Assembly: GCA_044892505.1 (NCBI GenBank)
Contig: CM097883.1
Location: 413,168,001 to 413,232,000 of the forward strand
Direction of reading: 5' to 3'
DNA length: 64,000 nucleotides
Origin: Schmidtea nova
Lineage: Eukaryota
Position numbers and translations under genes: made by a program. The notes below the pieces were generated by a model, which was given only the letters and a program-made list of their open reading frames with translations, did not search any database and had not been told where the DNA came from. Position 1 is the first letter of the stretch. Every line of letters starts with the position of its first letter. This document shows positions 3,161 to 29,783 of the stretch, in pieces.

Positions 3161-4983
3161 CAGTCAACCCTGTTTATTATGAACCCTGCTTAATATGAAC
3201 AGAGTTTAATATGAACATTTAAGTCAAAAATTATTAGAAATCATATGGTTTTCATGGGAAATTATGTTTTATAATACGAACACTGTTTAATTTTGAACAA
3301 TGCTCAAAATATAGTGTAAAATAAATCAATAATTTAAACAATTTCTTTTTAAAATATTTCATTTTTAACTGTCTTTTATTAACATGAAAAACACAAATTC
3401 AAAACGAAAAGGATTTAAATATCGAAGAGAAACAGAAATTGTTAAAATTATTCGATGAAGATAAAAGTTGTTCTCAACTCTTTCTTTCATCAAAATACAA
3501 TCTTTCATTAGGTTGTATAAATAATCTTATGAAATCCAGAGACTCCATTTTGAATTCACTCGAATACCACACAAAAAAGAAAAACACATTGATGTAGTAG
3601 ATATCAAATCGATGCCATCTTTTATGAATGGTTCCAGGCCCAGAGAACAAGAAATATCAGTGTCAGTGGTGACATATTACAACAAAAAGCATTAGAATTA
3701 GCAAATCACTTAGGAAATCATGATTTTAAACCATCAAATGGTTGGCTTAATTCTTTTCTTTCCAGGCATATGCTATCACCGAAAAGAATCATCGGAGAAT
3801 CTAAAACCGTAGATGAAAGGTATGTTCTTAATTTTAAGGAATTGTATATGGAAAAGTTAAAAGAATATGAAGATAGAAACGTTTATTATTTTGACGAAAC
3901 TGGACTGTTTTAGAAATGTTCATTAAACAGAACATATATAATTTCTAAAGAGGATAAAGCAAATGGTAAGTTTTCTGAAGATCGAATTACTATACTCTTG
4001 GGAGCAAACAAGTTAGGAGAAAAGTTAAAGCCTTTAGTGATAGGCATGTCGAAGAAACCTCATTGTTTTAAAAATTTCGATATAGAAAAATTACCTATTT
4101 ATTATCGTTGGAATACAAAATCTTGGATGACGTTGACAGTTTTTCAAGATTGGTTAAAAGATTTAAACAGTATAATGAAGGCAGAGGATCGGAAAATACT
4201 ATTATTGTTAGATAACGCACCTATTCACCCAAAAGACTTTGAATTGAGTAATATCGAATCATTCTTTTTCCCATCAAATACGTCATCTCTTATTAAACCT
4301 CTTGACCAAGGTATTATAAAAAGTTTTAAAGAATATTATAAGAAATTTTTGAGCCAGTCAATGAATTTTAATTTAGATATTAACGTTACACAAGAGATAT
4401 GGTGACAAAAAGGTTGATTTATATCAAGCAGTAGTTTGGATTTCGAAAGCATGGAATAGTGTAAAACCTGCGACTATTTCTAATTGTTATACCAAATCTT
4501 TCGAAAATGCGTATGTTAAAGAAATGAATGCTGAATGCGATGATTTTATATGTTTTGAAATTAATCTAAAATTTGACGAACATCTCTTGTTTGATCTAGT
4601 AGAAAAGTATCAAATGAAAGTTCTGAAAATGAAGAAACAAATGATAATTCTGTTGAAGAGGTAAAAGAAGATACAGTAATAACAGGATTCGAAGCCTATG
4701 AGCATGCAAGAAAACTCGAAAAATACTTCCAAACTAATATTCCTGATAAGATGAACAAAATATGGGATTTCATTGATGAAATTCGAGAAAAAACATCACA
4801 ACAATTGAAAATCACAGACTTTATAATGCGTCAAAGAAATAGAAATTGTGATAAATAGGTGTAATAAATACATTTTTTGTGAAATCTTCGATATTGTTGT
4901 GTTAATAATTGTTCATGTTACTTCTAAATATGAACATTTGACAAAATTGGAACGCTAGTGTTCATATTAAACAGGATTGACTG
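3161..4983 (+). mobile_element. Full-length but degenerate pogo/Tigger transposon (CENP-B HTH plus DDE_1)
   Basis: 24-bp TIRs CAGTCAACCCTGTTTATTATGAAC / GTTCATATTAAACAGGATTGACTG, with TA on the left. Broken ORF from 3384 (...FYEWFQAQR...FKPSNGWLNSF...FDETGLF); ORF 3998-4405 has KILLLLDNAPIH and FFPSNTSSLIKPLDQGII. Confidence 0.92.
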
Positions 4984-5179
4984 CATTTGTATATACTTTA
5001 TTTTGTATTGGAATTCATCTAACTTATAACGCGAGATTATCACAATTACCAAAAAACAATAATAAATAAAATATTGACCTTATATAAAAAATGGTAAAAT
5101 CATAATCAAATTATAATTTATTATAATTTTAATATCAAAATAAAAATAAATTTCACAATTTTATTTAAAATTGAAAATG

Positions 5180-8100
5180 TTAATTGTCCAATGTAACTTG
5201 GAAGGGTTTGGAAAATGCTCTATCGCGTCCACTGACTGCTTCACAGTGATAAATGGCATCATCACCCGGTTTAAAATCATTGATAGTTAAAACGCTAACA
5301 ACACTGTCACAATTGTTTTTGATTTCTCCAATTTTCATTCTCGATTCATCCGGTAAACAATTCCAATTGAATCTCCACGTGACGGCGGGCAGTGGAAGAC
5401 CTGCTACTTCACAAGTCAATTTCACAGTGGTTCCCGACCTTGCTCTAACATCTTTCATCGAAGTGCTGATGATAATTGGTTTAGCTGGCACACAAAAACG
5501 AAAATGCGAAATCAATTCCAAATGAAATAGACAAGAAAATATATTACCACAACCAATTTCATCTTCACCATTTCTACAGTCGGCAGTTCCATCACAGACA
5601 TAACCATAAGGCATCTTGTCACCATTGCTGCAAGTAAATTTCAAAGGTCTGCATTTGTCGGATGCTAGAAATATGTGAAAATATTTGATGGAATGACAAA
5701 AGCAAATTTAAACAATAAATTACCATCACAATGTTTTTCATCGAATCCATTTTTGCAGTCTTCTTCTCCATTGCAGGCCCAATCAATGTTGTATTTCTCA
5801 ACTGTGCTATTGCCGATGATTGGTCCACAAGCTTTCTGTACAGGGTCGCAAGAATCTAGATGGTTATTAATTGGTGGCCATTATTTTTATTTTAAAGCAA
5901 AAAAGTACTGCAATAAGATATATCTTCATCGGATCCATCTTTACAATCAACCACTCCATCACAGAATTTCTGATTGCTGACACATTCTCCACTCCTGCAG
6001 TAGCGATGGTTTGGTGGACAAATGTCTTGGACATTGATTGTAACGTAGGCAACTACTTCTCTAACTCCACAAGTCATCTGAAGTTGTTTGGCATCGATGT
6101 CGATTCCAAATGGAGCAACTAAACGAATTCTTGATGGTCCGACTTTTGAAATTTGAAATCTTTTATCCTTAGATACGAGAGATCCATTGAGAAATCTGAG
6201 ACTTGGTTCTCCAACAGGGGTTCCAACTTTGTCTTGAGTGAAACATTCAAATTCAAACTTTTGACGCTTTCGTACATTGAGAACTGGAGGGCTGACCTTG
6301 GCAACAAATGGTCCTGCAAAGGCAAAGTGAAATATAAAATAAAGGATTATATGTATATGAAATTACTGAATCGTTTCTCAACAATGAACTCGGCTTGGGT
6401 TTCTTGACCAGATGGAATTGAGCAAATGAAATAACCATTGTCTTCCATTTCTGCTGAATCGGTTCCAATGAAACTAGTCCTATCGGCTACATGTCCAGTA
6501 TAAGTAGTCCATCGTTTGTTTGGCATGGCGATTCTTTCTGATCCATCTTTTCTCACGAAATACCATTTGATGTCGGTATTTTTGACATTTGGAATGTTAT
6601 TGACTCGGCAGTGAAATTCACCAGGTTGACCTTCCAATCGTTTCTCAACAGCGGGAGAAATAGCCAACACTCCGTCATCTAGTAGGACACGAATAATCCA
6701 ACAATAACAATTGCTAAACAAGTTCATACCTTGAATGATGATGATGTTGACAGCTTTGGTGACATCACCTACTTGGCACTGATAATGTCCTTCATTTTTC
6801 ATTTGTGCATTGTTCAGAACGAGGATACTGACAAGTCTGCCATTGACTCGTGCAATGTTGAATTTGTTCAGGGAGTCTGGAGTAGATAATTCTTGGTTTT
6901 CGAACTTCCATTGAACATCTGATCCAGAATATTCACTGTCAGCAGAAATTTCACAATGCAGTTCTTTCTTTCTCGACACGATGACAGCGACTTGTGATCC
7001 GGCTCCTTCGATCAGTTCTACAGACGGGAAATTGAACTGGAAAATATAAATGCTGATCACATACCGACTTTAATTGGGACAAAGAATGATAGACGTTGAT
7101 AAGATTTGGCTTCTAATTCTACTTTCTGATTTCTTTGATCGAGTCCGACTATTTTACATTTGTACACTCCAAGCTTCGAACGGGCGAAACTGTCAAAGGT
7201 TATCGTTTGTTGATTGCTTTCCAACAGTTGATTGTCATGATACCAAGAATATTGAACTTGTTTCAGTTCTGGTGCCACTTGACATCGCATTGAGAACTTC
7301 TCATTCAAACGAAACTTTTGAGGATAAGGGGTGATTGTGATGGAATATGATGCATCTAAGGTGGTTGAGGAGGATTCAGCTGGATTGTCAAGCAAGCATC
7401 GTCAATGTATTAGTAACAATAGCAATGAGGAAATATACCAATAATGTTGACTGTTGAGATGAATGTTTTGCCTGATTTATGAGCTCTGTAATGACATTCG
7501 TATTGCCCGAATACCGATTCATCATTTATTGGGACTTGAATTGTGTCAGTCTTCGAGATTGTTCTTCCTTGGGAATCTATCCAATAATAAGAAAATCTTT
7601 CAGTCGATTGAGCCAATTTGAATCCGACACATTTCCTATGAATCAAGCCGTTGATTGTCAGTTTCTCGGAAGCTAGGATCTGTATTTGAACGGTTGGTAC
7701 TAAATGTTGACAAATAATTAGCATGGTTGAATATTCAACCAAATTTACCTGCAATCCTTAGAATGACATCTTTTCTGAAGACCTGGGTCGGTTGAGTTTT
7801 GTGAACAATGGCACAAGTGTATGTGTTTTCGTGTTGTTTCTTCAAAACTGATTCGATAAATAACCGTTCATTATTTGATATGACATATCCATCAGATTTG
7901 ATCCATTGTGCATCGTATTCGTTCCTTGACCAGTTCGTGACTGAGCATTCAATATCGAGATCTTGTGTTTCTTGCAGTGTGATAGTGTTGTGACTTCCAT
8001 CGAGTTGAGAAATGACAATGTTAGGAATGTTTTCTTGTTCCACAATTACTTGATCTAAAATGTGGAAAATATATAATAATTTCCGGATTTCTTTTGCGAT

Positions 8101-8435
8101 TTGTTACCTTGTTCAGTTATGGTGGACTTTTCTCCAGCAATCAATCCCGATTCTATTTTTTCACTTGATCTACAGACATATTTCCCAACATCTTTCAATT
8201 GAACATTTTTCAAATATAATTCTCGACCTTTGCCAATGATGACATTATTTCGTTCCCAATGTATATCAATGATATTTCTTTCATTTTCAGCAGAACACAA
8301 TAATTTGATATCTGAACCGATTCGAACCGTTTCAATTTTCAGTGGAGTTGGTTTCGTTTCAGGCTGACATGAATATATAGAAATCAACATGAAACAAAAC
8401 AGCAATTTCCATGATTGAACTTTGATGTCAAACAT
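5180..8435 (-). CDS. Secreted Ig(7)-LDLa(3)-Ig perlecan-like protein, copy A (10 exons, 922 aa predicted)
   Basis: Exons 8435-8108, 8054-7749, 7699-7439, 7379-7065, 7017-6730, 6678-6367, 6313-5909, 5855-5724, 5664-5548, 5484-5180. All introns are GT-AG and phase 1; no stops or frameshifts seen. Confidence 0.88.
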
Positions 8436-8922
8436 TATCAATGAATGAATGATGATATGAATTGATTACAGAAACAATTTCTTTTATAGTAGTTGCTGAT
8501 AGTGGGAATGTGAAACTATCAGTGATTTGATTGGATAATGTCACACATTACAATAGTTGACGCATACAAATTACAAACACAGCAATGAAAATGAATTTTG
8601 TCATTTTTTAAATATTTCTTACTTATTTTTATATATTTTATTCGAATGTAAAGTTTTAAAATAATGAAAATAATAACAACTCATTTAGAATAATAATAAT
8701 AATTATTCTGATAATAATATTATTTTAAGATAATAAAATTCACCGTTTATATTTCGGTTGGATTTGACCCACCTGTATAACCGGCATATAAGTAGAAGTT
8801 GATTTGATGTTCGTTCAAAATGGTGAAATAGTTTTGTGAATATTTACAGTTTTTATTCCATCTTTTCAAGTCTTTGATGTCGTTATGCTAATTATCTTTC
8901 ATTTCCATTGGAACTATATATA

Positions 8923-9277
8923 CAGGGGTGTGTTGCCAATGACTTAACAACCGACTCGCTAATAAAAAACAAACATTTTTTTATTTATTATATTGAAATA
9001 AGATTATACATATAATGCACTAAGCATACATTTATATAAACTGTATAACAGAGGAAGATGAAGTAGGCATATGAAGCCTTTATTAATGCATTCATATAAG
9101 CTCCATATACCTTATTCATTTCCTGAAAACGACTTCTCGACCCTTTTTTTCACTATCGTCTCCGTTGCCAGTCTATGACTTTCATTTATCCACGACTTTA
9201 CCATCTGCGAAATAATTTAACAACTGGCTCGGCGATTTTCCAAAATTTTAACAACCGGCTCGTGCGAGCCAGTGCGA
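8923..9277. mobile_element. Partial hAT-type MITE inside the inverted arm (mirror at 11842-12196)
   Basis: Starts CAGGGGTGTGTTGCCAATGACTTAACAACCG with repeated TTAACAAC(C/T)GG motifs. The other end is not visible; the element is absent from copy C. Confidence 0.5.
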
Positions 9278-9479
9278 NNNNNNNNNNNNNNNNNNNNNNN
9301 NNNNNNNNNNNNNNNNNNNNNNNNNNNNNNNNNNNNNNNNNNNNNNNNNNNNNNNNNNNNNNNNNNNNNNNNNNNNNNNNNNNNNNNNNNNNNNNNNNNN
9401 NNNNNNNNNNNNNNNNNNNNNNNNNNNNNNNNNNNNNNNNNNNNNNNNNNNNNNNNNNNNNNNNNNNNNNNNNNNNNNN
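9278..9479. other. Assembly gap (202 N)
   Basis: Run of N. Confidence 1.
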
Positions 9480-10549: not shown

Positions 10550-12683
10550 AATTCATACGATAAATTATTATTATTATTAATATCTCTTATTTTGACCTTT
10601 GATAATTTATATTCATAAATTTTTATTTTTCTATAATTTATTTTTCAAAGTAAGAATACCCCTCTTCTATCGAGTTCCTTCACTTTAATGGATGTTTTCC
10701 AGATATTAAAGAAAGAAATTGGAAATTTTTTATTTTTTCACTTGAAGATGAAATGAGGTTTACTGGTTCCACCTGTTCATCATACATAGGATATCATCAT
10801 AGTTAAACTGTTAACCAGAGACCAGATTCGTTTACAATATCGCTCTGATTTACTGTTCAGTGATTAAATCTTTTATATTCCGATTCTTAAATTTTAAGTT
10901 TTGTGCTAGATTCCGTTCAGTTCAGGTTTTTGTTCTTTTTCTAAGTTTTGTTCTCTTAAATAATTTCTTCGATCTGGTAAAGTAAGTTTTCTGGGTTACT
11001 TGGTAATCTAACTCTTACTCACTCCTAGTAACCGCTATATCAATGCGATTTAACCATATTGCTTCCCGTCGCGTACCAACGTTGGTGCTGTACCAAATGA
11101 GTGAATATCCGCAAAAGCTGAGCACTGTTTCAGGACTATAATTGACCGGATATCATGTTTTGGTTTAAGTGCTACTGACAGAAGGTATAATGCCCATTTC
11201 TATGTTCCTTCAATTTCTATAAGAATCATATCAGTACATTTGTACTAATCTTCGAAAATTATTCTGTAAGTCTAAGCAATGAATTAATATCAATCAATAA
11301 GCAATATTTTCTAACTTCGAATAATCGAATCATCGAACTTACGAATAAATTCTTAAAAAAAAGGAGCCCATGAAAACAAGTTTTTAATGCAACTCTTTCG
11401 TTTTCTAATGTTCTCGGTTAATTTTACTGTTGTTTCATTGTTTGGTAGTTTCTTGGCAACAGTAAATTGAAAAATCACATTGTTTCAAAATTTTTCAATT
11501 TTTCAATGGAATAATTTGTGGGCCACCACGAGTCTGCTCGCAAATCTTCAGGTCGATTGGATATCGGGAAGTGGGTTAAAAATCAATCCAAAGTTTGACA
11601 AGAAAACAAACAGAAATTGGAAGTTAAGAAAGAGTTAAATAAGATCAGGATCAGTATATTCACGATCGCGCAAATCTTATCTAAATATTCTTGCTATTTC
11701 TGCAAAAGAACTAGTCGTTCTAAGATTGATTCGTACTCCTCAATCGTAATCTTTAACGGATAAAATATCTCATTACTCCCTCTGGTCCTAATAGTTAATA
11801 TGTTTTGTAGGCTAAAACTAGTTAAAATATTGCTCGCTAGATCGCACTGGCTCGCACGAGCCGGTTGTTAAAATTTTGGAAAATCGCCGAGCCAGTTGTT
11901 AAATTATTTCGCAGATGGTAAAGTCGTGGATAAATGAAAGTCATAGACTGGCAACGGAGACGATAGTGAAAAAAAGGGTCGAGAAGTCGTTTTCAGGAAA
12001 TGAATAAGGTATATGGAGCTTATATGAATGCATTAATAAAGGCTTCATATGCCTACTTCATCTTCCTCTGTTATACAGTTTATATAAATGTATGCTTAGT
12101 GCATTATATGTATAATCTTATTTCAATATAATAAATAAAAAAATGTTTGTTTTTTATTAGCGAGTCGGTTGTTAAGTCATTGGCAACACACCCCTGTATA
12201 TATAGTTCCAATGGAAATGAAAGATAATTAGCATAACGACATCAAAGACTTGAAAAGATGGAATAAAAACTGTAAATATTCACAAAACTATTTCACCATT
12301 TTGAACGAACATCAAATCAACTTCTACTTATATGCCGGTTATACAGGTGGGTCAAATCCAACCGAAATATAAACGGTGAATTTTATTATCTTAAAATAAT
12401 ATTATTATCAGAATAATTATTATTATTATTCTAAATGAGTTGTTATTATTTTCATTATTTTAAAACTTTACATTCGAATAAAATATATAAAAATAAGTAA
12501 GAAATATTTAAAAAATGACAAAATTCATTTTCATTGCTGTGTTTGTAATTTGTATGCGTCAACTATTGTAATGTGTGACATTATCCAATCAAATCACTGA
12601 TAGTTTCACATTCCCACTATCAGCAACTACTATAAAAGAAATTGTTTCTGTAATCAATTCATATCATCATTCATTCATTGATA

Positions 12684-15600
12684 ATGTTTGACATCAAAGT
12701 TCAATCATGGAAATTGCTGTTTTGTTTCATGTTGATTTCTATATATTCATGTCAGCCTGAAACGAAACCAACTCCACTGAAAATTGAAACGGTTCGAATC
12801 GGTTCAGATATCAAATTATTGTGTTCTGCTGAAAATGAAAGAAATATCATTGATATACATTGGGAACGAAATAATGTCATCATTGGCAAAGGTCGAGAAT
12901 TATATTTGAAAAATGTTCAATTGAAAGATGTTGGGAAATATGTCTGTAGATCAAGTGAAAAAATAGAATCGGGATTGATTGCTGGAGAAAAGTCCACCAT
13001 AACTGAACAAGGTAACAAATCGCAAAAGAAATCCGGAAATTATTATATATTTTCCACATTTTAGATCAAGTAATTGTGGAACAAGAAAACATTCCTAACA
13101 TTGTCATTTCTCAACTCGATGGAAGTCACAACACTATCACACTGCAAGAAACACAAGATCTCGATATTGAATGCTCAGTCACGAACTGGTCAAGGAACGA
13201 ATACGATGCACAATGGATCAAATCTGATGGATATGTCATATCAAATAATGAACGGTTATTTATCGAATCAGTTTTGAAGAAACAACACGAAAACACATAC
13301 ACTTGTGCCATTGTTCACAAAACTCAACCGACCCAGGTCTTCAGAAAAGATGTCATTCTAAGGATTGCAGGTAAAATTGAATGAATATTCAACCATGCTA
13401 ATCATTTGTCAACATTTAGTACCAATCGTTCAAATACAGATCCTAGCTTCCGAGAAACTGACAATCAACGGCTTGATTCATAGGAAATGTGTCGGATTCA
13501 AATTGGCTCAATCGACTGAAAGATTTTCTTATTATTGGATAGATTCCCAAGGAAGAACAATCTCGAAGACTGACACAATTCAAGTCCCAATAAATGATGA
13601 ATCGGTATTCGGGCAATACGAATGTCATTACAGAGCTCATAAATCAGGCAAAACATTCATCTCAACAGTCAACATTATTGGTATATTTCCTCATTTCTAT
13701 TGTTACTAATACATTGACGATGCTTGCTTGACAATCCAGCTGAATCCTCCTCAACCACCTTAGATGCATCATATTCCATCACAATCACCCCTTATCCTCA
13801 AAAGTTTCGTTTGAATGAGAAGTTCTCAATGCGATGTCAAGTGGCACCAGAACTGAAACAAGTTCAATATTCTTGGTATCATGACAATCAACTGTTGGAA
13901 AGCAATCAACAAACGATAACCTTTGACAGTTTCGCCCGTTCGAAGCTTGGAGTGTACAAATGTAAAATAGTCGGACTGGATCAAAGAAATCAGAAAGTAG
14001 AATTAGAAGCCAAATCTTATCAACGTCTATCATTCTTTGTCCCAATTAAAGTCGGTATGTGATCAGCATTTATATTTTCCAGTTCAATTTACCGTCTGTA
14101 GAACTGATCGAAGGAGCCGGATCACAAGTCGCTGTCATCGTGTCGAGAAAGAAAGAACTGCATTGTGAAATTTCTGCTGACAGTGAATATTCTGGATCAG
14201 ATGTTCAATGGAAGTTCGAAAACCAAGAATTATCTACTCCAGACTCCCTGAACAAATTCAACATTGCACGAGTCAATGGCAGACTTGTCAGTATCCTCGT
14301 TCTGAACAATGCACAAATGAAAAATGAAGGACATTATCAGTGCCAAGTAGGTGATGTCACCAAAGCTGTCAACATCATCATCATTCAAGGTATGAACTTG
14401 TTTAGCAATTGTTACTGTTGGATTATTCTTGTCCTACTAGATGACGGAGTGTTGGCTATTTCTCCCGCTGTTGAGAAACGATTGGAAGGTCAACCTGGTG
14501 AATTTCACTGCCGAGTCAATAACATTCCAAATGTCAAAAATACCGACATCAAATGGTATTTCGTGAGAAAAGATGGATCTGAAAGAATCGCCATGCCAAA
14601 CAAACGATGGACTACTTATACTGGACATGTAGCCGATAGGACTAGTTTCATTGGAACCGATTCAGCAGAAATGGAAGACAATGGTTATTTCATTTGCTCA
14701 ATTCCATCTGGTCAAGAAACCCAAGCCGAGTTCATTGTTGAGAAACGATTCAGTAATTTCATACACATAATCCTTTATTTTATATTTCACTTTGCCTTTG
14801 CAGGACCATTTGTTGCCAAGGTCAGCCCTCCAGTTCTCAATGTACGAAAGCGTCAAAAGTTTGAATTCGAATGTTTCACTCAAGACAAAGTTGGAACCCC
14901 TGTTGGAGAACCAAGTCTCAGATTTCTCAATGGATCTCTCGTATCTAAGGATAAAAGATTTCAAATTTCAAAAGTCGGACCATCAAGAATTCGTTTAGTT
15001 GCTCCATTTGGAATTGACATCGATGCCAAACAACTTCAGATGACTTGTGGAGTTAGAGAAGTAGTTGCCTACGTTACAATCAATGTCCAAGACATTTGTC
15101 CACCAAACCATCGCTACTGCAGGAGTGGAGAATGTGTCAGCAATCAGAAATTCTGTGATGGAGTGGTTGATTGTAAAGATGGATCCGATGAAGATATATC
15201 TTATTGCAGTACTACTTTGCATAATAATAATAATAATGGCCACCAATTAATAACCATCTAGATTCTTGCGACCCTGTACAGAGAGCTTGTGGACCAATCA
15301 TCGGTAATAGCACAGTTGAGAAATACAACATTGATTGGGCCTGCAATGGAGAAGAAGACTGCAAAAATGGATTCGATGAAAAACATTGTGATGGTAATTT
15401 ATTGTTTAAATTTGCTTTTGTCATTCCATCAAATATTTTCATATATTTCTAGCATCCGACAAATGCAGACCTTTGAAATTTACTTGCAGCAATGGTGACA
15501 AGATGCCTTATGGTTATGTCTGTGATGGAACTGCCGACTGTAGAAATGGTGAAGATGAAATTGGTTGTGGTAATATATTTTCTTGTCTATTTCATTTGGA

Positions 15601-15937
15601 ATTGATTTCGCATTTTCGTTTTTGTGTGCCAGCTAAACCAATTATCATCAGCACTTCGATGAAAGATGTTAGAGCAAGGTCGGGAACCACTGTGAAATTG
15701 ACTTGTGAAGTAGCAGGTCTTCCACTGCCCGCCGTCACGTGGAGATTCAATTGGAATTGTTTACCGGATGAATCGAGAATGAAAATTGGAGAAATCAAAA
15801 ACAATTGTGACAGTGTTGTTAGCGTTTTAACTATCAATGATTTTAAACCGGGTGATGATGCCATTTATCACTGTGAAGCCGTCAGTGGACGCGATAGAGC
15901 ATTTTCCAAACCCTTCCAAGTTACATTGGACAATTAA
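12684..15937 (+). CDS. Secreted Ig(7)-LDLa(3)-Ig perlecan-like protein, copy B (10 exons, 922 aa predicted)
   Basis: Exons 12684-13011, 13065-13370, 13420-13680, 13740-14054, 14102-14389, 14441-14752, 14804-15208, 15262-15393, 15453-15569, 15633-15937 total 2769 nt (923 codons with stop). Signal-like [23 protein letters not shown]; Ig C..W..Y-x-C motifs; LDLa [13 protein letters not shown]; last Ig has TWRFNW and YHCEA. Confidence 0.9.
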
Positions 15938-15951
15938 CATTTTCAATTTTA

Positions 15952-15957
15952 AATAAA
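15952..15957 (+). promoter_or_regulatory. Polyadenylation signal AATAAA of copy B (conserved in A and C)
   Basis: AATAAA about 15 nt after the TAA stop in all three copies. Confidence 0.6.
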
Positions 15958-17580
15958 ATTGTGAAATTTTTTTTTATTTTGATGACAACATTTTATTCAG
16001 TTTTTATTTTATAATATAATTTTATATAATTATTATTTAATTATACAATTTACATATAATGGGTGTAATGTTACATATTGAAAAGACTGCCCGTTATTTT
16101 TGTACTCGAGTTCTTAAAATAAATTAATTAAATCTATTGTTGGGCTGGTAAAAGCAAAATTAATTATCTGTTTTATCGAGTCAAAAATAAATGTATAAAA
16201 ATAGGTATATTCAAAACTCACGAAAATGAGAAATAGCACTAAGTAGTTACAATCATAAACTATTGGGAAATTAAAATATTAGAGCACAAGAGAATATCAA
16301 CTCGAAAATAGTGTCGGGATTTTATAAAATAAGCTCAAATAAAAAAATAAAAAGCACAAAAACTCGATAAAAATCAATAAAACTATAATCATTCTAAAAG
16401 TAATAATTAAACTAATAAAATTAATTAAAATTTAAAAATATAGTTTTAGCGGGGGAAATTGGTATGGAAGTATGTCAAATTGTGAGACGAATCCAAAAAT
16501 GGTAAAATCAAAATAATGGGGCTCCTCAGAAGAATAGAATTAAAAAATTAATTTATTAAAATTTAATTGGCTAATGAAAAACTCGAGCCAATGGATAACT
16601 CGAGTAGGTGCGAAGCACGGAGGATCAGCAAAATAGTTAATTTTCCCCGGGAAATTTGATTTTAAAGGAAACTTGAAAAATCCAATTGATAGGAAAACAA
16701 TTAACAATTTTATGATAATTAATTAGATTAGGAAGTGTCAACTTGAGACGCACCCACCAGACACCCTAATCAGATAGGAAAAAAATCATCAAGCTGGACA
16801 ATATAAAAAGAAGAGACATATTCCAAAGTTTTCTTGAGTGGAGGAAAATAAATGTTAGTAAATATTTACAAGACGAGAGGTTGAGAATCAGTAGTATTTT
16901 GAATCAAATTAATTCTTATTATCGTATCAGAAAGAGAGATCTGATTTATCCTTCCGCTTAATCAGAAAAGCAGAGAGAATAGAAGTTGTTAAAATTGTGT
17001 AAAAAGACTTATTATTATCAAAGATTGTGTCAAATAGTTGGTGTAAATACTTTCGAATAAATTTTACTGTATTAGGTATTCTTGAGTCAATTCAAAAGGA
17101 ACACTAAGGAGTCAGATAAACAGCACCTACTAATTGTTAAATACCCTTCAAAAATAGCATACAAACCGATTTCATAAGTCGGTCCATGTAGTGGTAAAAC
17201 GATAGAAAAAAAAGAAAACACACAATTTGATTACAGGTCGAATTTCCATATGGTGGACCACAAGAAAATTGAATGGGTAATAACCATTGTATAAAAATAA
17301 TACCAAAATAGAGAGAATAATTTATAAAAGATTATAGAAAGAAATACCCATTAAAATATCATTAAAATCATAGAAATAAGAATAAAAATTAAATTAAATT
17401 TGATTAGATTTGATTGTTTTGACCAATCTTTAACGAGCAGTAACACATCTTTTAGCAAATAATATAGAAATAGCTAGAAAATAAATTAAATGAATAGAAA
17501 ATTAATATAATCGAATAAATTGCAAAATGAATCATTTATCGAGTAAACATGCACAGTTAAATTCTAATTAGTTATAATTT

Positions 17581-17795
17581 TTATTATCAATAATTCTCAT
17601 AATGACTATAGATCAAAATTTTTTTTTATAAACAATAACACAATATTTCGGCACAGCCTTTATCACTTGATAAAGGCTGTGCCGAAATATTGTGTTATTG
17701 TTTATAAAAAAAAATTTTGATCTATAGTCATTATGAGAATTATTGATAATAATAATAAAAAAAGATCAAAGGTGAAAAAAGATAATTATGATAGT
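17581..17795 (+). mobile_element. Fold-back hairpin family copy 2: perfect 85-bp arms, 2-nt loop, plus family tail
   Basis: 17581-17665 is the exact reverse complement of 17668-17752; loop CT. Tail AAAGATCAAAGGTGAAAAAAGATAATTATGATA follows. Confidence 0.85.
17664..17694 (+). ncRNA. Minimal type I hammerhead ribozyme motif (U3-A8 variant, Penelope-like)
   Basis: CAC-UUGAUAA-A-GGC(UGU)GCC-GAAA-UA-UU-GUG: stem I CAC/GUG, stem II GGC/GCC, palindromic AUAU stem III, NUH site AUU at 17689-17691. Activity untested. Confidence 0.55.
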
Positions 17796-19058: not shown

Positions 19059-20159
19059 CACCGTATAACGATGACCAACATTTCCTATAATATTAAATTA
19101 AATTACACTATAGAAATTCAAAACACTCACCTGTGTGTTATCGGTGTGCTAACATTCATTAACATCCTTTATTATGTGGTAGACAAAAAGGATAGAAAAA
19201 TTTTGTAAACCACAAAAAGGCATTATATAGTATAAACTGCATGCAAACTTTTAATGGGTGCAAATCTAATCAATCACTAACATCCCGTAATAAATCTTAC
19301 GCACACAAAAAAATTTGATATTTTCTTCATTTTAATTATTTTTTTATCGATTTTTAAAATGAAATTAAAAGCAAAATCATTGAAAAAAAATATATTTCAA
19401 GAAGGCATATTTTAAGATGTCTTTTTCATTTAAAAATTAAATAATTTTTTATAGCAAATCCGATAATTCTGAAGGCTCCCAGTTAAGCTTTTGGGAAAAC
19501 AACCAGCTAAATTTGTAAATATTATTTTTTTTAATATATCATTAAATCAAAATTTTTATAGAATATCATTTAATGAATGGCAATCAAGTTCTACAGGGCT
19601 TGGTTTGGAAAGAAAAACTAGAAACAAAAGCTGAAAAAGTCAAAATCGTGAATGCCATGGAAAATGGGGAAAATTATTTTCAATTTGGTAGACTGTTAGG
19701 AATTACTAAAAACACAATAAAAGCAATAGTAGTTAAGTATAAAAAATTTGGCTTTAAATCAAAAGGGAAAATCGGTGGCAGCAAATCAAAGATTTCCGAA
19801 GGAAATGGAAACAAACTGTTAGATTATGTAGAAAAAAAATTATTTTTCAATCTAACAGAAATAAAAAATTACTTAAATACACAAAACTGTTCGATTTTTG
19901 AAAAATAGTCCAAAATGCTGCAAAAAAATAGTTATCTCTGGAGATTAATGTTATTAATGTAATAAAATAATAAATTTTACTTTAGTTACTTACTTTATGT
20001 GAATATTAATCCAATAAATTGTTGGCAAAAGGCTAAAAAATGATATTTAAATGATAAAATTAAGTAATTTTCTTACTTAAAACAAAGAAAATTCATGAGT
20101 AATCATGAATACGCACACCAACTAGCATTATAGAGGATGTTAGTCATCGTTATACGGTG
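19059..20159 (+). mobile_element. Non-autonomous IS630/Tc1-type element, 1101 bp
   Basis: TIRs CACCGTATAACGATGAC(C/T)AACAT with TA on both sides. ORF 19573-19908 resembles a Tc1-like N-terminal HTH; no DDE region remains. Confidence 0.8.
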
Positions 20160-22660: not shown

Positions 22661-22769
22661 TATAAATAAAATTGACTTCTATTTAATTTTTTGTTTTACT
22701 ACACTCTACCTTGCAAGTTACAATCTTACATTGCTAATAGCAATCATTTTACTAAACCTCCAAGTTATG

Positions 22770-24045
22770 TGGAGGCAAACCTGAAGGCATGGGCCACCAG
22801 GCAGTTCTTTGTGGATTGGGTAAACCTGGTTTTTGGCCCTTCTCTTAAAAGATATCTACAGGAAAACGACCTACCCATGCAAGCCATTCTTGTCCTCAAC
22901 AATGCTCCTGATCACCCACTGAACCTCGAAGATGACAGCATCGAAGAGTTCAAGTTTATAAAAGTTCTTTACCTACCACCCAACACCTCTCCTATCCTGC
23001 AGCCCATGGACCAGCAGATGATTTCAAATTTAAAGAAACTGTGTATCATGCATCTGTTCCGGCGTTGTTTTGAGGTAACGTAGAACACAAACCTCACACT
23101 TCGAGAGTTCTGGAAGGTCCACTTTAACATCATAATATGCCTCAGAATTGTTGATCAGGCCTTACTGGGTGTTACAGCGAGAATCTTGGCCTTTGCTTGG
23201 AAGAAGTTGTGGCCTGAAACTGTAATTGAAAGGACCTTTGAAAGATTTGAACCCGAAGTATCAGTGGAGGATCGGATCGTGTCTCTGGAAAAATCCATGG
23301 GTCTGGAGGTGGATGAGAGAGACGTGAACGAGCTCGTCAAGTAGCACTCTCAGGAACTGACGACCGGGGAGTTACAAGAGTTACAGTTGCAGCAGCATAC
23401 GGAGGTTCTTCGGGAAATTATTTTCGAAGAGGAGCCAGAAAGGGAGATGGTTATCTCTAAAAGAGAGATCAAGGACATTTTGGGAAAGTGGGAGAGTGTT
23501 TCACAGTTCGTGGAAAAGAAACACCCCGAAAAGGCTGCAACTGGTTGTGCATCGGAGCTATTTAATGACCCTTGCCTAACTCATTTCCAAAACATTCTGA
23601 AAGAGAGAAAGAAACAAACCTCCTTCGACAGTTTATTTTGAAACGACTTGCAGGAGAAAGTGAGTAAAGCGTGGTAAAATGCAAAGACCAGTGGAGAGAA
23701 AAACAGTGACGAAAAGTAAGCGAAAGTTAGCGAAAGTTAGCGAAAGTAACACTTCCTCCAGCATCTTATGTAAGCTCAAGTCGTCTAATTTTTAAGGTAA
23801 ATACACTATATAAAACCAATCTATTTCTTTATATTCTCTTTTATTATTTTAATACAATATTTGTCATTTAACACTCAATAAATAAATTTTTCATATTCAA
23901 GAACACGTAACAAAAACAACTGAAGTGCGATTTCGGGGGCTGAAACGGATTATTGGCATTTCAATAAATTTCAATGGAGAAAAATGCTTCAATATACGAG
24001 CAAGGTTAACGGAACGAATTAAACTAGTTTGTCGATATACCACTA
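22770..24045 (+). mobile_element. 3' half of a Tigger (pogo) transposon
   Basis: ORF 22691-23083 has KAWATRQFFVDW, AILVLNNAPDHP and LPPNTSPILQPMDQQMISNLK. Right end GAATTAAACTAGTTTGTCGATATACCACT followed by a TA run. Confidence 0.88.
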
Positions 24046-24229: not shown

Positions 24230-24377
24230 AAGCCTTGTCACTGTATGTATGTGTCTGTAACGCTGATAATAAATCAACTTAATAAATTTATTTTAATAAA
24301 TTTCAATTTTAATCTACTTACTATAGTAAGTAGACTGTCTAATGTGGTCAGCGTTACAGACACATACAGTGAGAAGG

Positions 24378-24380
<3 letters not shown>
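24230..24380. mobile_element. 151-bp MITE with about 33-bp TIRs, abutting (TA)n at 24381-24445
   Basis: AAGCCTTGTCACTGTATG(TATG)TGTCTGTAACGCTGA versus TCAGCGTTACAGACACATACAGTGAGAAGGCTT. Internal 20-bp palindrome at 24314-24333. Confidence 0.7.
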
Positions 24381-24455
<75 letters not shown>

Positions 24456-25914: not shown

Positions 25915-28900
25915 AAAGACTTGCAGAGATGAAATAAAAACTGTAAATATTCACAAAACTATTTCACCATTGTGAACGAAAATCAAATCAACTTCTACTT
26001 ATATGCCGGTTATACAGAGGGGTCAAATCTGCCCGAAATATGAACGGTGAATTTTATTATCTTAAAATAATATTATTATCAGAATAATTATTATTATTAT
26101 TCTAAATGAGTTGTTATTATTTTCATTATTTTAAAACTTTACATTCGAATAAAATATATAAAAATAAGTAAGAAATATTTAAAAAATGACAAAATTCATT
26201 TTCATTGCTGTGTTTGTAATTTGTATGCGTCAACTATTGTAATGTGTGACATTATCCAATCAAATCACTGATAGTTTCACATTCCCACTATCAGCAACTA
26301 CTATAAAAGAAATTGTTTCTGTAATCAATTCATATCATCATTCATTCATTGATAATGTTTGACATCAAAGTTCAATCATGGAAATTGCTGTTTTGTTTCA
26401 TGTTGATTTCTATATATTCATGTCAGCCTGAAACGAAACCAACTCCACTGAAAATTGAAACGGTTCGAATCGGTTCAGATATCAAATTATTGTGTTCTGC
26501 TGAAAATGAAAGAAATATCATTGATATACATTGGGAACGAAATAATGTCATCATTGGCAAAGGTCGAGAATTATATTTGAAAAATGTTCAATTGAAAGAT
26601 GTTGGGAAATATGTCTGTAGATCAAGTGAAAAAATAGAATCGGGATTGATTGCTGGAGAAAAGTCCACCATAACTGAACAAGGTAACAAATCGCAAAAGA
26701 AATCCGGAAATTATTATATATTTTCCACATTTTAGATCAAGTAATTGTGGAACAAGAAAACATTCCTAACATTGTCATTTCTCAACTCGATGGAAGTCAC
26801 AACACTATCACACTGCAAGAAACACAAGATCTCGATATTGAATGCTCAGTCACGAACTGGTCAAGGAACGAATACGATGCACAATGGATCAAATCTGATG
26901 GATATGTCATATCAAATAATGAACGGTTATTTATCGAATCAGTTTTGAAGAAACAACACGAAAACACATACACTTGTGCCATTGTTCACAAAACTCAACC
27001 GACCCAGGTCTTCAGAAAAGATGTCATTCTAAGGATTGCAGGTAAAATTGAATGAATATTCAACCATGCTAATCATTTGTCAACATTTAGTACCAACCGT
27101 TCAAATACAGATCCTAGCTTCCGAGAAACTGACAATCAACGGCTTGATTCATAGGAAATGTGTCGGATTCAAATTGGCTCAATCGACTGAAAGATTTTCT
27201 TATTATTGGATAGATTCCCAAGGAAGAACAATCTCGAAGACTGACACAATTCAAGTCCCAATAAATGATGAATCGGTATTCGGGCAATACGAATGTCATT
27301 ACAGAGCTCATAAATCAGGCAAAACATTCATCTCAACAGTCAACATTATTGGTATATTTTCTCATTGCTATTGTTACTAATACATTGACGATGCTTGCTT
27401 GACAATCCAGCTGAATCCTCCTCAACCACCTTAGATGCATCATATTCCATCACAATCACCCCTTATCCTCAAAAGTTCCGTTTGAATGAGAAGTTCTCAA
27501 TGCGATGTCAAGTGGCACCAGAACTGAAACAAGTTCAATATTCTTGGTATCATGACAATCAACTGTTGGAAAGCAATCAGCAAACGATAACCTTTGACAG
27601 TTTCACCCGTTCGAAGCTTGGAGTGTACAAATGTAAAATAGTCGGACTGGATCAACGAAATCAGAAAGTAGAATTAGAAGCCAAATCTTATCAACGTCTA
27701 TCATTCTTTGTCCCAATTAAAGTCGGTATGTGATCAGCATTTATATTTTCCAATTCAATTTCCCGTCTGTAGAACTGATCGAAGGAGCCGGATCACAAGT
27801 CGCTGTCATCGTGTCGAGAAAGAAAGAACTGCACTGTGAAATTTCTGCTGACAGTGAATATTCTGGATCAGATGTTCAATGGAAGTTCGAAAACCAAGAA
27901 TTATCTACTCCAGACTCCCTCAACAAATTCAACATTGCACGAGTCAATGGCAGACTTGTCAGTATCCTCGTTCTGAACAATGCACAAATGAAAAATGAAG
28001 GACATTATCAGTGCCAAGTAGGTGATGTCACCAAAGCTGTCAACATCATCATCATTCAAGGTATGAACTTGTTTAGCAATTGTTATTGTTGGATTATTCG
28101 TGTCCTACTAGATGACGGAGTGTTGGCTATTTCGCCCGCAGTTGAAAAACGATTGGAAGGTCAACCTGGTGAATTTCACTGCCGAGTCAATAACATTCCA
28201 AATGTCAAAAATACCGACATCAAATGGTATTTCGTGAGGAAAGATGGATCTGAAAGAATCGCCATGCCAAACAAACGATGGACTACTTATACTGGACATG
28301 TAGCCGATAGGACTAGTTTCATTGGAACCGATTCGGCAGAAATGGAAGACAATGGTTATTTCATTTGCTCAATTCCATCTGGTCAAGAAACCCAAGCCGA
28401 GTTCATTGTTGAGAAACGATTCAGTAATTTCATAAACATATAATCCTTTATTTTATATTTCACTTTGCCTTTGCAGGACCATTTGTTGCCAAGGTGAGCC
28501 CTCCTGTTCTCAATGTACGAAAGCGTCAAAAGTTTGAATTTGAATGTTTCACTCAAGACAAAGTTGGAACCCCTGTTGGAGAACCAAGTCTCAGATTTCT
28601 CAATGGATCTCTCGTATCTAAGGATAAAAGATTTCAAATTTCAAAAGTCGGACCATCAAGAATTCGTTTAGTTGCTCCATTTGGAATTGACATCGATGCC
28701 AAACAACTTCAGATGACTTGTGGAGTTAGAGAAGTAGTTGCCTACGTTACAATCAATGTCCAAGACATTTGTCCACCAAACCATCGCTACTGCAGGAGTG
28801 GAGAATGTGTCAGCAATCAGAAATTCTGTGATGGAGTGGTTGATTGTAAAGATGGATCCGATGAAGATATATCTTATTGCAGTACTACTTTGCATAATAA

Positions 28901-29783
28901 TAATAATGGTCACCAATTAATAACCATCTAGATTCTTGCGACCCTGTACAGAGAGCTTGTGGACCAATCATCGGCAATAGCACAGTTGAGAAATACAACA
29001 TTGATTGGGCCTGCAATGGAGAAGAAGACTGCAAAAATGGATTCGATGAAAAACATTGTGATGGTAATTTATTGTTTAAATTTGCTTTTGTCATTCCATC
29101 AAATATTTTCACATATTTCTAGCATCCGACAAATGCAGACCTTTGAAATTTACTTGTAGCAATGGTGACAAGATGCCTTATGGTTATGTCTGTGATGGAA
29201 CTGCCGACTGTAGAAATGGTGAAGATGAAATTGGTTGTGGTAATATATTTTATTGTCTATATCGTTTGGAATTGATGTCGCATTTTCTTTTTTGTGTGCC
29301 AGCTAAACCAATTATCATCAGCACTTCGATGAAAGATGTTAGAGCAAGGTCGGGAACCACTGTGAAATTGACTTGTGAAGTAGCAGGTCTTCCACTGCCC
29401 GCCGTCACGTGGAGATTCAATTGGAATTGTTTACCGGATGAATCGAGAATGAAAATTGGAGAAATCAAAAACAATTGTGACAGTGTTGTTAGCGTTTTAA
29501 CTATCAATGATTTTAAACCGGGTGATGATGCCATTTATCACTGTGAAGCCGTCAGTGGACGCGATAGAGCATTTTCCAAACCCTTCCAAGTTACATTGGA
29601 CAATTAACATTTTCAATTTTAAATAAAACTTTGAAATATATATTTTTATTTTGATGACAACATTTTATTCAGTTTTTATTTTATAATATAATTTTATATA
29701 ATTATTATTTAATTATACAATTTACATATAATTGGTGTAATGTCACATACGTTGAAAAGACTGCCCGTTATCTATGTACTCGA
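25915..29783 (+). repeat. Duplicated block C (direct repeat of 12244-16109)
   Basis: Homology starts at AAAGACTTG and ends at TGTACTCGA. Confidence 0.95.
26355..29607 (+). CDS. Secreted Ig(7)-LDLa(3)-Ig perlecan-like protein, copy C (10 exons, 922 aa predicted)
   Basis: Exons 26355-26682, 26736-27041, 27091-27351, 27411-27725, 27773-28060, 28112-28423, 28477-28881, 28932-29063, 29123-29239, 29303-29607. Splice sites and frame are intact. Confidence 0.88.

What the first reader, a model, noticed from the sequence alone, without database searches (positions are those of the whole stretch)
12684..15937. Stand-alone secreted 'mini-perlecan': Ig x7 - LDLa x3 - perlecan-type Ig, ending before the laminin domains
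Seen: a clean 10-exon, all-phase-1 gene of 922 aa with a signal peptide, no transmembrane segment, and stop plus AATAAA right after the last Ig. Known: in perlecan/UNC-52/Trol, the LDLa cluster is followed by a distinctive Ig (recalled as GxPxPxIxWRLNWG...DxGxYTCEA), then laminin B/EGF, a long Ig array and LG domains. The last Ig here ([17 protein letters not shown]...DDAIYHCEA) matches that Ig, but everything C-terminal is absent. Inference: a perlecan N-terminal half has become an independent, amplified secreted protein, perhaps a novel matrix, adhesive or lipoprotein/morphogen-binding factor.
Basis: partly seen in the sequence, partly recalled or inferred. Interest (0 to 1): 0.78.

Follow-up and report, generated by a model that had tools for sequence, protein, structure and literature searches.

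The report
Flatworm secreted Ig-LDLa protein, triplicated
The gene is real and intact, but it is an uncharacterised member, present in three near-identical copies, of a known flatworm-specific family of secreted Ig/LDL-receptor-repeat proteins (planarian LDLRR / "IgLdl") whose tail resembles the start of perlecan.

Summary
Window 12684-15937 (+) carries a 10-exon, all-phase-1 gene of 922 aa. It encodes a signal peptide, seven Ig-like domains, three LDLa modules and a terminal I-set Ig. A stop and AATAAA follow directly, and there is no transmembrane segment. Two more intact copies lie at 5180-8435 (-) and 26355-29607 (+), with synonymous changes far outnumbering non-synonymous ones.

The last Ig does match the Ig after the LDLa cluster of true perlecans. 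It scores 39-53 bits there, against 16-17 bits for any other Ig in those proteins.

The "novel mini-perlecan" reading is only partly right. The protein aligns end to end with a Platyhelminthes-wide family of about 850 aa: Dendrocoelum "LDL-1" at 40% over 798 aa, plus schistosome, Taenia and Echinococcus proteins. All of them end within a few residues after the same Ig.

Planarian papers already describe this architecture. LDLRR-1/-3 are secreted and HSPG-like, and knockdown impairs brain regeneration (PMC5055394). Six "Ig-LDL" proteins are called Platyhelminth-specific and like the very N-terminus of perlecan (PMC6453901).

A 92-aa Schmidtea mediterranea transcript fragment (dd_Smed_v4_55870) nearly matches the last exon, including the stop. 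No read-level RNA evidence could be obtained for this locus.

Verdict: new member of a known kind, low to moderate interest.

The parts
12631..12637 (+). TATAAAA, putative TATA box 47 nt upstream of the start codon
   Evidence: Read directly from the sequence. It lies inside the 12372-13375 tract that is identical in all three copies.
12684..13011 (+). Exon 1: start codon, signal peptide, Ig1
   Evidence: Gene model. Pfam Ig_2 at 1.6e-8 and Ig_3 at 1.3e-7. Most of this exon has no aligned counterpart in the roughly 850-aa relatives.
13065..13370 (+). Exon 2: Ig2
   Evidence: Gene model. Weak Pfam V-set and Ig_3 hits at 5e-4 to 1e-3. Generic Ig HMM envelope at residues 125-208.
13420..13680 (+). 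Exon 3: Ig3 (cryptic in sequence searches)
   Evidence: No Pfam Ig hit. Invariant Cys, Trp and Cys in alignment A3. AF2 model at pLDDT 85 is all-beta. Ig-like structural matches at TM 0.64-0.71 with weak E-values.
13740..14054 (+). Exon 4: Ig4
   Evidence: Pfam Ig_2 at 1.6e-7 and Ig_3 at 4.2e-7.
14102..14389 (+). Exon 5: Ig5
   Evidence: Pfam I-set at 1.8e-6. 38% identical to Dendrocoelum LDL-1 over this domain.
14441..14752 (+). Exon 6: Ig6
   Evidence: Weak Pfam V-set hit. 47% identical to Dendrocoelum LDL-1 over this domain.
14804..15208 (+). Exon 7: Ig7 (no Trp, DPRF-type motif) plus LDLa1 (canonical six Cys)
   Evidence: Pfam Ldl_recept_a at 3e-9. AF2 model at pLDDT 93. Foldseek hits to NCAM, titin and antibody Ig at E about 1e-5. 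The same Ig-LDLa unit is repeated many times in Taenia P0153.
15262..15393 (+). Exon 8: LDLa2, five-cysteine variant with an insertion
   Evidence: Pfam Ldl_recept_a at 7.4e-6, covering the C-terminal half only. The cysteine pattern is invariant in 26 family rows.
15453..15569 (+). Exon 9: LDLa3, five-cysteine variant (third Cys replaced)
   Evidence: Pfam Ldl_recept_a at 2.2e-10. Cysteine pattern.
15633..15937 (+). Exon 10: terminal I-set Ig (WRFNWNC motif, extra Cys pair) and TAA stop at 15935-15937
   Evidence: Pfam Ig_3 at 1.5e-12 and I-set at 1.7e-12. Scores 66-99 bits to family terminal Igs and 39-53 bits to perlecan domain-II Ig. Trees. 89 of 92 residues identical to S. mediterranea transcript dd_Smed_v4_55870, including the stop.
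15952..15957 (+). AATAAA polyadenylation signal, 15 nt after the stop
   Evidence: Read directly. Similarity between the copies ends soon after, at 16024 and 16109.
5180..8435 (-). Copy A of the gene. Intact CDS, head-to-head with copy B; the homology runs up to the N gap at 9278.
   Evidence: blastn at 99.0% over 4185 nt. Intact CDS and GT..AG at all introns. Differs from copy B at 6 synonymous and 2 non-synonymous codons.
26355..29607 (+). Copy C of the gene, intact CDS
   Evidence: blastn at 98.5% over 3872 nt. Intact CDS. Differs from copy B at 15 synonymous and 2 non-synonymous codons.

Best explanation
This is a functional, secreted member of the flatworm-specific Ig-LDLa family. The family is called LDLRR-1/-3 and 'IgLdl' in Schmidtea, 'LDL-1' in Dendrocoelum, and is auto-named 'basement membrane-specific heparan sulfate proteoglycan core protein' in parasitic flatworms.

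The genome is a planarian of the genus Schmidtea, probably S. mediterranea.

The protein has two parts. The first is a fast-evolving array of seven Ig-like domains. The second is a conserved C-terminal cassette of three LDLa modules and one Ig, homologous to perlecan domain II, after which the protein ends.

The cassette most likely arose from a perlecan-type gene before triclads and neodermatans split (inferred). This paralogue then expanded to three copies locally, and all three are kept under purifying selection (shown).

By analogy with LDLRR-1/-3, the product is probably released into the parenchymal extracellular matrix. There the calcium-binding LDLa modules and the Ig domains would bind matrix or signalling ligands (inferred, not tested).
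For: - Gene model and domains.
- Three intact copies. Synonymous versus non-synonymous codon differences are 6:2, 15:2 and 17:2. Intron divergence is 2.9-3.3% against exon divergence of 0.3-0.7%.
- End-to-end BLASTP alignment with Dendrocoelum lacteum LDL-1 (P0186): 40% over 798 aa, 611 bits. About 30% over about 840 aa with Schistosoma, Trichobilharzia, Paragonimus, Spirometra, Taenia and Schistocephalus proteins. All of these alignments end within 0-4 residues of both C-termini.
- In the representative library, the most similar terminal Igs are all at or near a C-terminus.
- Intronless transcript contigs of relatives encode 833-852 aa. One ends in a 3' UTR with a run of A.
- A cysteine framework of 6+5+5 in the LDLa modules and 4 in the Ig is invariant in 25-26 family rows.
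- The Ig's best non-family matches are the domain-II Igs of true perlecans, at 39-53 bits against 16-17 bits for the next Ig in the same proteins.
- In the tree the domain-IV Igs separate at 93/90 support. A single clade of family plus perlecan domain-II Igs is not rejected (AU p = 0.49).
- Literature: PMC5055394 and PMC6453901.
- S. mediterranea transcript dd_Smed_v4_55870 is 89/92 identical to exon 10, with the same stop.
Against: - There is no read-level RNA evidence for this locus.
- The only transcript evidence is a 92-aa fragment with three residue differences, seen in few cells (114 in the atlas column) and with no gene model listed. It may come from another paralogue or strain.
- The tree link between the family Ig and the perlecan domain-II Ig has only moderate support (88/83). 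It is 'not rejected' rather than shown.
- Function is extrapolated from paralogues that share only about 30-40% identity at best.
- The signal peptide was judged by eye and hydropathy only.
Confidence: 0.85

Rival explanations
1. The model is only the 5' part, or an alternative short isoform, of a longer perlecan-like gene whose laminin B/EGF, Ig-array and LamG exons lie further downstream.
For: The planarian perlecan homologues plc and phmus-1 begin with a similar Ig/LDLa arrangement and then continue into laminin B (PMC6453901). No RNA reads were available for this locus.
Against: - tblastn with two true perlecans finds only the Ig/LDLa exons of the three copies. Nothing matches the laminin or LamG parts anywhere in the 64 kb.
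- Downstream of copy B there are only transposon remnants: HTH and DDE_1.
- All nine real donors start with GTA. After the last Ig cysteine the only GT is a phase-0 GTTACA.
- The stop and AATAAA are kept in all three copies.
- Relatives across the phylum end at the same residue, including intronless transcript contigs with a 3' UTR.
- The S. mediterranea transcript fragment has the same stop.
Confidence: 0.03
2. The gene is real, but the 'amplification' is partly an assembly artefact. One or two of the three copies would be uncollapsed haplotypes or misjoined duplicates rather than separate loci.
For: The copies are 98.5-99% identical. The homology of copy A stops exactly at an N gap, 9278-9479. 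A 1-kb stretch (12372-13375) is identical in all three. Read depth could not be examined.
Against: The three copies sit in one contiguous window with different flanks and different orientations, and the homology ends at different points (16024 versus 16109; starts at 11842 versus 12244). Private variants occur on each copy, about 14 on A, 10 on B and 22 on C by my own count from the difference list, which fits an ((A,B),C) history of real paralogues.
Confidence: 0.1
3. The copies are young duplicates that are silent or on the way to becoming pseudogenes. The apparent constraint would reflect gene conversion rather than selection on a product.
For: The matching S. mediterranea transcript is a low-abundance fragment with no cell-type enrichment and no gene model. 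The identical 1-kb 5' tract suggests ongoing conversion.
Against: All three reading frames and all 27 splice-site pairs are intact. Non-synonymous changes are 2 against 6-17 synonymous per pair, and introns have diverged five- to tenfold more than exons. Conversion alone would not spare introns less than exons.
Confidence: 0.08

Closest known systems
Planarian LDLRR-1 / LDLRR-3 (dd_Smed_v4_1054 'IgLdl', 914 aa) and Dendrocoelum lacteum LDL-1 (UniProt T1DBM0, P0186)
   Same: All have a signal peptide, no transmembrane segment, an N-terminal Ig array, three LDLa modules and one terminal Ig followed by a stop, at about 830-920 aa (PMC6453901 supplement; PMC5055394). The window protein aligns end to end with LDL-1 at 40% over 798 aa. 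It shares the invariant 6+5+5+4 cysteine framework with LDL-1 and the other family rows.
   Different: It is a distinct paralogue. Only 21-47% of residues match LDL-1 in the N-terminal Igs, and exon 1 adds an Ig with almost no aligned counterpart. It is present in three copies here. The only transcript known for it was a 92-aa fragment excluded from the published matrisome. Expression pattern and RNAi phenotype are unknown.
Neodermatan orthologues auto-annotated 'Basement membrane-specific heparan sulfate proteoglycan core protein' or 'Ig-like domain-containing protein' (Schistocephalus P0103, Schistosoma P0173, Echinococcus P0170, Taenia P0106/P0153)
   Same: The same C-terminal LDLa x3 plus Ig cassette and the same C-terminus. 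Identity is 46-52% in the last Ig and 42-63% in LDLa1.
   Different: Most are about 850 aa with fewer N-terminal Igs. Taenia P0153 instead has a 2756-aa array of repeated [Ig-like + LDLa] units before the same ending.
Perlecan (HSPG2 / UNC-52 / Trol), domain II
   Same: An LDLa cluster is followed directly by an I-set Ig carrying WR(L/F)NW ... DxGxYxCEA. That Ig is by far the best match among 13-18 Igs in each true perlecan tested, at 39-46 bits against 16-17 bits. The best tblastn HSP spans perlecan's last LDLa plus this Ig.
   Different: There is no SEA/GAG domain I, no laminin B/EGF domain III, no domain-IV Ig array and no LamG/EGF domain V. Seven Igs precede the LDLa cluster. LDLa2 and LDLa3 have five cysteines and the Ig has an extra cysteine pair, whereas the three perlecans inspected have six-cysteine modules and two-cysteine Igs.
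Planarian perlecan (plc, dd_6915) and pharynx muscle-1 (phmus-1, dd_8356)
   Same: [quoted passage not shown]
   Different: Both continue into at least one laminin B domain. They show that Schmidtea mediterranea has a separate perlecan, so the present gene is a paralogue and not the species' perlecan. I could not align them here, because the sequences in the supplement are truncated and have no reference.

Membership tests
Flatworm secreted Ig-LDLa family (LDLRR / IgLdl / LDL-1) | N-terminal signal peptide and no transmembrane segment | tested here: met
   The hydrophobic N-terminus was read by eye. The maximum Kyte-Doolittle 19-residue mean elsewhere is 1.45. No dedicated signal-peptide predictor was available.
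Flatworm secreted Ig-LDLa family (LDLRR / IgLdl / LDL-1) | An array of Ig-like domains before the LDLa cluster, the last one being the Trp-less 'DPRF' type fused to LDLa1 | tested here: met
   Pfam and HMM hits. Alignments A2 and A3. AF2 models with Foldseek matches.
Flatworm secreted Ig-LDLa family (LDLRR / IgLdl / LDL-1) | Three LDLa modules with a 6+5+5 cysteine pattern | tested here: met
   All 16 cysteine columns are conserved in 25-26 of 26 rows, including the window protein.
Flatworm secreted Ig-LDLa family (LDLRR / IgLdl / LDL-1) | Terminal I-set Ig with WR[FY]NW, an extra cysteine pair, and the protein ending a few residues later | tested here: met
   The window has WRFNWNC...NNC. It scores 66-99 bits to family terminal Igs, which lie 0-4 residues from the C-terminus in 12 of the 15 family rows (exceptions: fragment P0066 at 30, partial model P0133 at 201).
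Flatworm secreted Ig-LDLa family (LDLRR / IgLdl / LDL-1) | Colinear full-length alignment with named members | tested here: met
   P0186 (Dendrocoelum LDL-1): 40% over 798 aa, E = 0. About 30% over about 840 aa with more than 25 trematode and cestode proteins.
Flatworm secreted Ig-LDLa family (LDLRR / IgLdl / LDL-1) | Expression in differentiated parenchymal (cathepsin+) cells and a role in regeneration, as for LDLRR-1/-3 | not testable with these tools
   This is known only for the paralogues. The matching transcript fragment shows no cluster enrichment.
Perlecan (HSPG2 / UNC-52 / Trol) | LDLa cluster followed by the domain-II Ig (WRLNWG type) | tested here: met
   Domain-specific scores, tblastn HSP, tree and AU test. 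The motif here is the variant WRFNWNC.
Perlecan (HSPG2 / UNC-52 / Trol) | Domain III: laminin B and laminin-type EGF modules | tested here: not met
   No Pfam hit in any exon. No tblastn match in the 64-kb window. True perlecans P0038 and P0042 do show these domains with the same tools.
Perlecan (HSPG2 / UNC-52 / Trol) | Domain IV long Ig array and domain V LamG/EGF | tested here: not met
   The protein ends at residue 922, right after the domain-II-type Ig.
Perlecan (HSPG2 / UNC-52 / Trol) | Domain I with SEA module and clustered SGD glycosaminoglycan attachment sites | tested here: not met
   No SEA hit. There are seven SG dipeptides, none in an SGD cluster.

The most novel reading that the evidence does not exclude
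The triplicated paralogue would be a planarian-specific offshoot in which a conserved LDLa x3-Ig 'anchor' cassette carries a rapidly diversifying seven-Ig 'binder' array, including an extra N-terminal Ig. The copies would be kept alike by gene conversion, hence the identical 1-kb 5' tract. On this reading the protein acts as a secreted recognition or opsonin-like factor, not as a matrix or signalling modulator like LDLRR-1/-3. In addition, the two five-cysteine LDLa modules would be joined by an inter-module disulfide unknown in other LDLa proteins.
Probability: 0.1. Interest if true: 0.5.

Novelty: new member of a known kind. Interest (0 to 1): 0.25.

Why it matters
The finding adds a full-length gene model, in three copies, for a planarian Ig-LDLa family member. 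Until now that member was visible only as a 92-aa transcript fragment, which was dropped from the published planarian matrisome.

It also sharpens the family definition. The defining features are a fixed C-terminus, a 6+5+5 cysteine LDLa cassette and a four-cysteine, perlecan-domain-II-type Ig, all conserved from planarians to tapeworms and flukes.

This is useful for annotation, because many of these proteins are auto-named 'perlecan' although they lack every laminin-type domain. It is also useful for anyone studying LDLRR genes in regeneration. It does not reveal a new kind of protein or mechanism.

Tried and rejected
No read-level evidence on splicing, the 3' end or copy number could therefore be obtained.
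- The look-up of sequencing runs found only four runs of one study, none recorded as RNA.
- The PDB sequence search with the last Ig gave only generic I-set Igs such as Dscam, DCC and PTPRD.
- The ESM Atlas feature search gave only generic Ig clusters below 0.9.
- A profile search with a mixed alignment of homologues and window exon pieces was swamped by the first sequence's words and returned nothing useful.
- The spliced 922-aa protein has no reference. I therefore could not submit it whole to the database tools, and could not check whether this exact protein is already deposited.
- The 'mosaic variant' idea: the interleaved private variants fit a simple ((A,B),C) history. Only the variant-free tract 12372-13375 calls for gene conversion.
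- The Rfam gathering scan of 16450-64000 found no family, so the hammerhead reading of the 17577-17756 hairpin is not supported at that threshold.
- One Pfam query (window:9272-9790) spanned the N run 9278-9479. It was translated as given, nothing was filled in, and it matched nothing.
Full report
**1. The observation**

The region was read directly and spliced by script. The ten exons are 12684-13011, 13065-13370, 13420-13680, 13740-14054, 14102-14389, 14441-14752, 14804-15208, 15262-15393, 15453-15569 and 15633-15937. Together they give a 2769-nt reading frame of 922 codons with no internal stop. All nine introns are GT..AG, 47-63 nt long and phase 1.

The stop TAA is at 15935-15937, AATAAA at 15952-15957 and TATAAAA at 12631-12637.

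Pfam on the individual exons finds Ig domains clearly in exons 1, 4, 5 and 10 and weakly in exons 2 and 6. It finds LDLa in exons 7, 8 and 9. Two segments had no Pfam Ig hit: exon 3 and the first 96 residues of exon 7.
- Exon 3 shows invariant Cys-Trp-Cys in an alignment with relatives. It folds at pLDDT 85 into a seven-strand beta domain. Its best structural matches are Ig domains of CD4, CD146 and NCAM at TM 0.64-0.71, although the E-values are weak.
- Exon 7 folds at pLDDT 93. It matches NCAM, titin and antibody Ig domains at E about 1e-5.

No 19-residue window reaches transmembrane-like hydropathy; the maximum mean is 1.45. The N-terminus looks like a signal peptide, but this was judged by eye only.

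**2. Three copies under selection**

A self-comparison shows the gene three times in the window:
- copy A on the minus strand (homology 9277..5095, CDS 5180-8435), 99.0% identical;
- copy B, the finding itself;
- copy C (homology 25915..29783, CDS 26355-29607), 98.5% identical.

All three have intact reading frames and intact splice sites. Pairwise codon differences are 6, 15 and 17 synonymous against 2 non-synonymous each. Introns differ by 2.9-3.3% and exons by 0.3-0.7%. This is the signature of purifying selection on a protein product.

A 1-kb tract, 12372-13375, covers the promoter, exon 1, intron 1 and exon 2. It has no difference at all among the three copies, while the rest of the unit averages about 1.8% variable sites by my count from the list. 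That points to recent gene conversion.

The homology of copy A stops exactly at an N gap (9278-9479). Read depth could not be checked, so a partial assembly artefact remains a minor possibility.

**3. Is it a stand-alone gene?**

- Downstream of copy B, up to copy C, the open frames are transposon remnants: an HTH domain and a pogo-type DDE_1.
- tblastn with two true perlecans (P0038 and P0057) against the window, with 16409-16444 masked, hits only the Ig and LDLa exons of the three copies. Nothing matches the laminin B, laminin EGF or LamG parts.
- All real donors begin with GTA. In exon 10 the only GTA lies in the middle of the Ig at phase 0. After the last Ig cysteine the only GT is a phase-0 GTTACA. 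Splicing past the stop is therefore unlikely.

Direct RNA evidence could not be obtained. The four runs that hold the stretch are not recorded as RNA. I worked beside those places and sent none of their letters to any search tool afterwards.

**4. Relatives**

An exhaustive phmmer search with LDLa3 plus the last Ig gave 3334 hits. After re-scoring by single domain, the highest-scoring Igs (66-99 bits) all carry WR[FY]NW. In 12 of the 15 family rows they sit 0-4 residues from the C-terminus; the exceptions are a fragment (P0066, 30 residues) and a partial model that continues into Kunitz domains (P0133, 201 residues).

Their names and a second search show they are all flatworm proteins:
- cestodes: Schistocephalus, Spirometra, Taenia, Echinococcus, Hymenolepis, Mesocestoides, Anoplocephala;
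- trematodes: Schistosoma, Trichobilharzia, Heterobilharzia, Paragonimus, Opisthorchis, Echinostoma, Calicophoron, Dicrocoelium, Fasciola;
- a planarian: Dendrocoelum lacteum 'LDL-1'.

Outside flatworms the search drops to LDLa-only matches.

The spliced window protein aligns end to end with Dendrocoelum LDL-1 (40% over 798 aa, 611 bits). It aligns at about 30% over about 840 aa with the parasite proteins. The alignments end at both C-termini.

Two relatives are intronless transcript contigs of 2.8-3.1 kb that encode 833 and 852 aa. One has a 295-nt 3' UTR ending in a run of A. The short form is therefore a real mRNA in relatives.

Conservation rises along the protein. Against four representative family members, the N-terminal Igs are 6-47% identical, LDLa1 42-63% and the last Ig 46-52%. 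Exon 1 has almost no aligned counterpart in the roughly 850-aa proteins, so this paralogue carries an extra N-terminal Ig.

**5. The perlecan link**

P0038 (4303 aa), P0042 and P0057 were taken as true perlecans. Pfam shows laminin B, laminin EGF, LamG and 17-18 Igs in the first two. In all three, the window's last Ig matches the single Ig that follows the LDLa cluster at 39-46 bits. The next best Ig of the same protein scores 16-17 bits. A fish-like fragment (P0120) scores 53 bits.

In maximum-likelihood trees of 68-73 Ig domains:
- the window Ig sits with the family terminal Igs;
- the four perlecan domain-II Igs form a starred clade (99-100/93-95);
- the 45 domain-IV Igs lie on the other side of a 93/90 branch;
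- holding family plus perlecan domain II together costs 0.38 log-likelihood units (AU p = 0.49).

With about 92 columns, however, the sister relation is 'consistent, moderately supported' rather than proven.

The family has also diverged from perlecan. LDLa2 and LDLa3 each lack the third cysteine, and the Ig has an extra cysteine pair. Both features are invariant in 25-26 family rows and absent from the three perlecans inspected. There is no SEA domain and no SGD cluster, so nothing suggests that the protein is a heparan sulfate proteoglycan.

**6. What the literature already says**

Roberts-Galbraith et al. 2016 (PMC5055394) describe planarian LDLRR-1 and LDLRR-3. These proteins have a signal peptide, no transmembrane domain and closest similarity to basement-membrane HSPGs. 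They are expressed in differentiated non-muscle parenchymal cells and were identified in a screen for genes required for proper brain regeneration.

Cote et al. [quoted passage not shown] Their table lists dd_1054 (LDLRR-3) as 914 aa, with a signal peptide, six Ig-type domain annotations, three LDLa and a terminal Ig, enriched in cathepsin+ cells. The same paper shows that the species has a separate perlecan (plc) and a shorter relative (phmus-1) that do contain laminin B. Later work uses ldlrr-3 as a cathepsin+ cell marker.

In the table of contigs excluded from that matrisome, dd_Smed_v4_55870 is a 92-aa open frame. It is 89/92 identical to the window's last exon, has the same ...VTLDN stop, and its best human hit is HSPG2. 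It was rejected for lack of a signal peptide. No SMESG gene model is listed for it, and it was detected in 114 atlas cells without cluster enrichment.

This places the window in Schmidtea, probably S. mediterranea. It also shows that this gene, or a very close paralogue, is transcribed at a low level and had not been recognised as a full-length family member.

**7. Mechanism**

Shown: an intact secreted-type multidomain protein, three copies under purifying selection, family membership, and homology of the C-terminal cassette to perlecan domain II.

Inferred:
- The cassette was copied from a perlecan-type gene in an early flatworm.
- The product is secreted into the parenchymal matrix.
- LDLa1, which has the canonical CDGxxDCxDGSDE acidic cluster, binds calcium and basic ligands as LDLa modules generally do (established knowledge of the LDLa fold, not tested here).
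- The variable Ig array provides binding specificity.
- The two five-cysteine modules may be linked by a disulfide between their unpaired first cysteines. This is a speculation from cysteine counting only.

**8. Verdict**

The 'mini-perlecan' is a member of a known, phylum-wide, already named family, not a newly truncated perlecan.

What is new is modest: a full-length model for a previously fragmentary paralogue, its local triplication with a converted 5' kilobase, and a sharper sequence definition of the family.

Interest is 0.25. Novelty: new member of a known kind.

Noticed in passing
window 12372-13375, and the matching parts of copies A and C: A 1004-bp tract covering the promoter, exon 1, intron 1 and exon 2 has no difference among the three copies. 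The rest of the unit has about 1.8% variable sites, by my count from the list. Recent gene conversion of the 5' end is the likely cause.
   Followed up: partly
window 14390-14440, 14753-14803 and 15570-15632: Introns 5, 6 and 9 are multiples of three (51, 51 and 63 nt) and free of stops. Exons 5-7 therefore read through as one 400-aa ORF (14059-15261) and exons 9-10 as one 154-aa ORF. Retention of these introns would keep the reading frame.
   Followed up: no
window 15262-15569; family proteins P0103, P0119, P0106, P0186 and others: LDLa modules 2 and 3 of the whole flatworm family lack the third cysteine, giving five Cys each. The terminal Ig has an extra Cys pair (NW[GNR]C ... C). Both features are invariant in 25-26 rows and absent from three true perlecans. 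They hint at an inter-module disulfide.
   Followed up: partly
Related short pieces lie at 1994-2079, 25762-25827 and 47137-47185. Rfam at gathering threshold found no family in 16450-64000.
   Followed up: partly
window 38946-39797 (+): A single-exon ORF of 283 aa with an N-terminal BTG-family domain (Pfam PF07742, E = 6e-27). This is probably a BTG/Tob antiproliferative gene.
   Followed up: no
window 3998-4405, 19573-19908 and 22691-23083: Transposon remnants lie between and beside the gene copies: pogo/Tigger-type DDE_1 (E = 2.5e-33 and 3e-14) and an HTH of the Sleeping Beauty/paired type.
   Followed up: no
L002-L004 (JGI metatranscriptome contigs) and L001 (Logan SRR10482241): Full-length intronless transcripts of family members (852 and 833 aa) from unidentified organisms occur in environmental or unlabelled RNA data sets. 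P0119 has a 72%-identical relative, P0154.
   Followed up: no
P0153 (Taenia crassiceps, 2756 aa) versus P0106 (Taenia solium, 635 aa): The tapeworm version of the family is a long array of at least 16 LDLa modules alternating with the Trp-less Ig-like unit, ending in the same cassette. The T. solium model looks like a truncated prediction of the same gene.
   Followed up: partly
P0133 (Opisthorchis, partial, 348 aa): In this gene model the family's usual C-terminus (...LVLLND) runs on into three Kunitz domains. This is either a fused prediction of two neighbouring genes or a real variant.
   Followed up: no
window 24245-24472: A TA-rich microsatellite reads as a run of IYIYIY in one frame.
   Followed up: no
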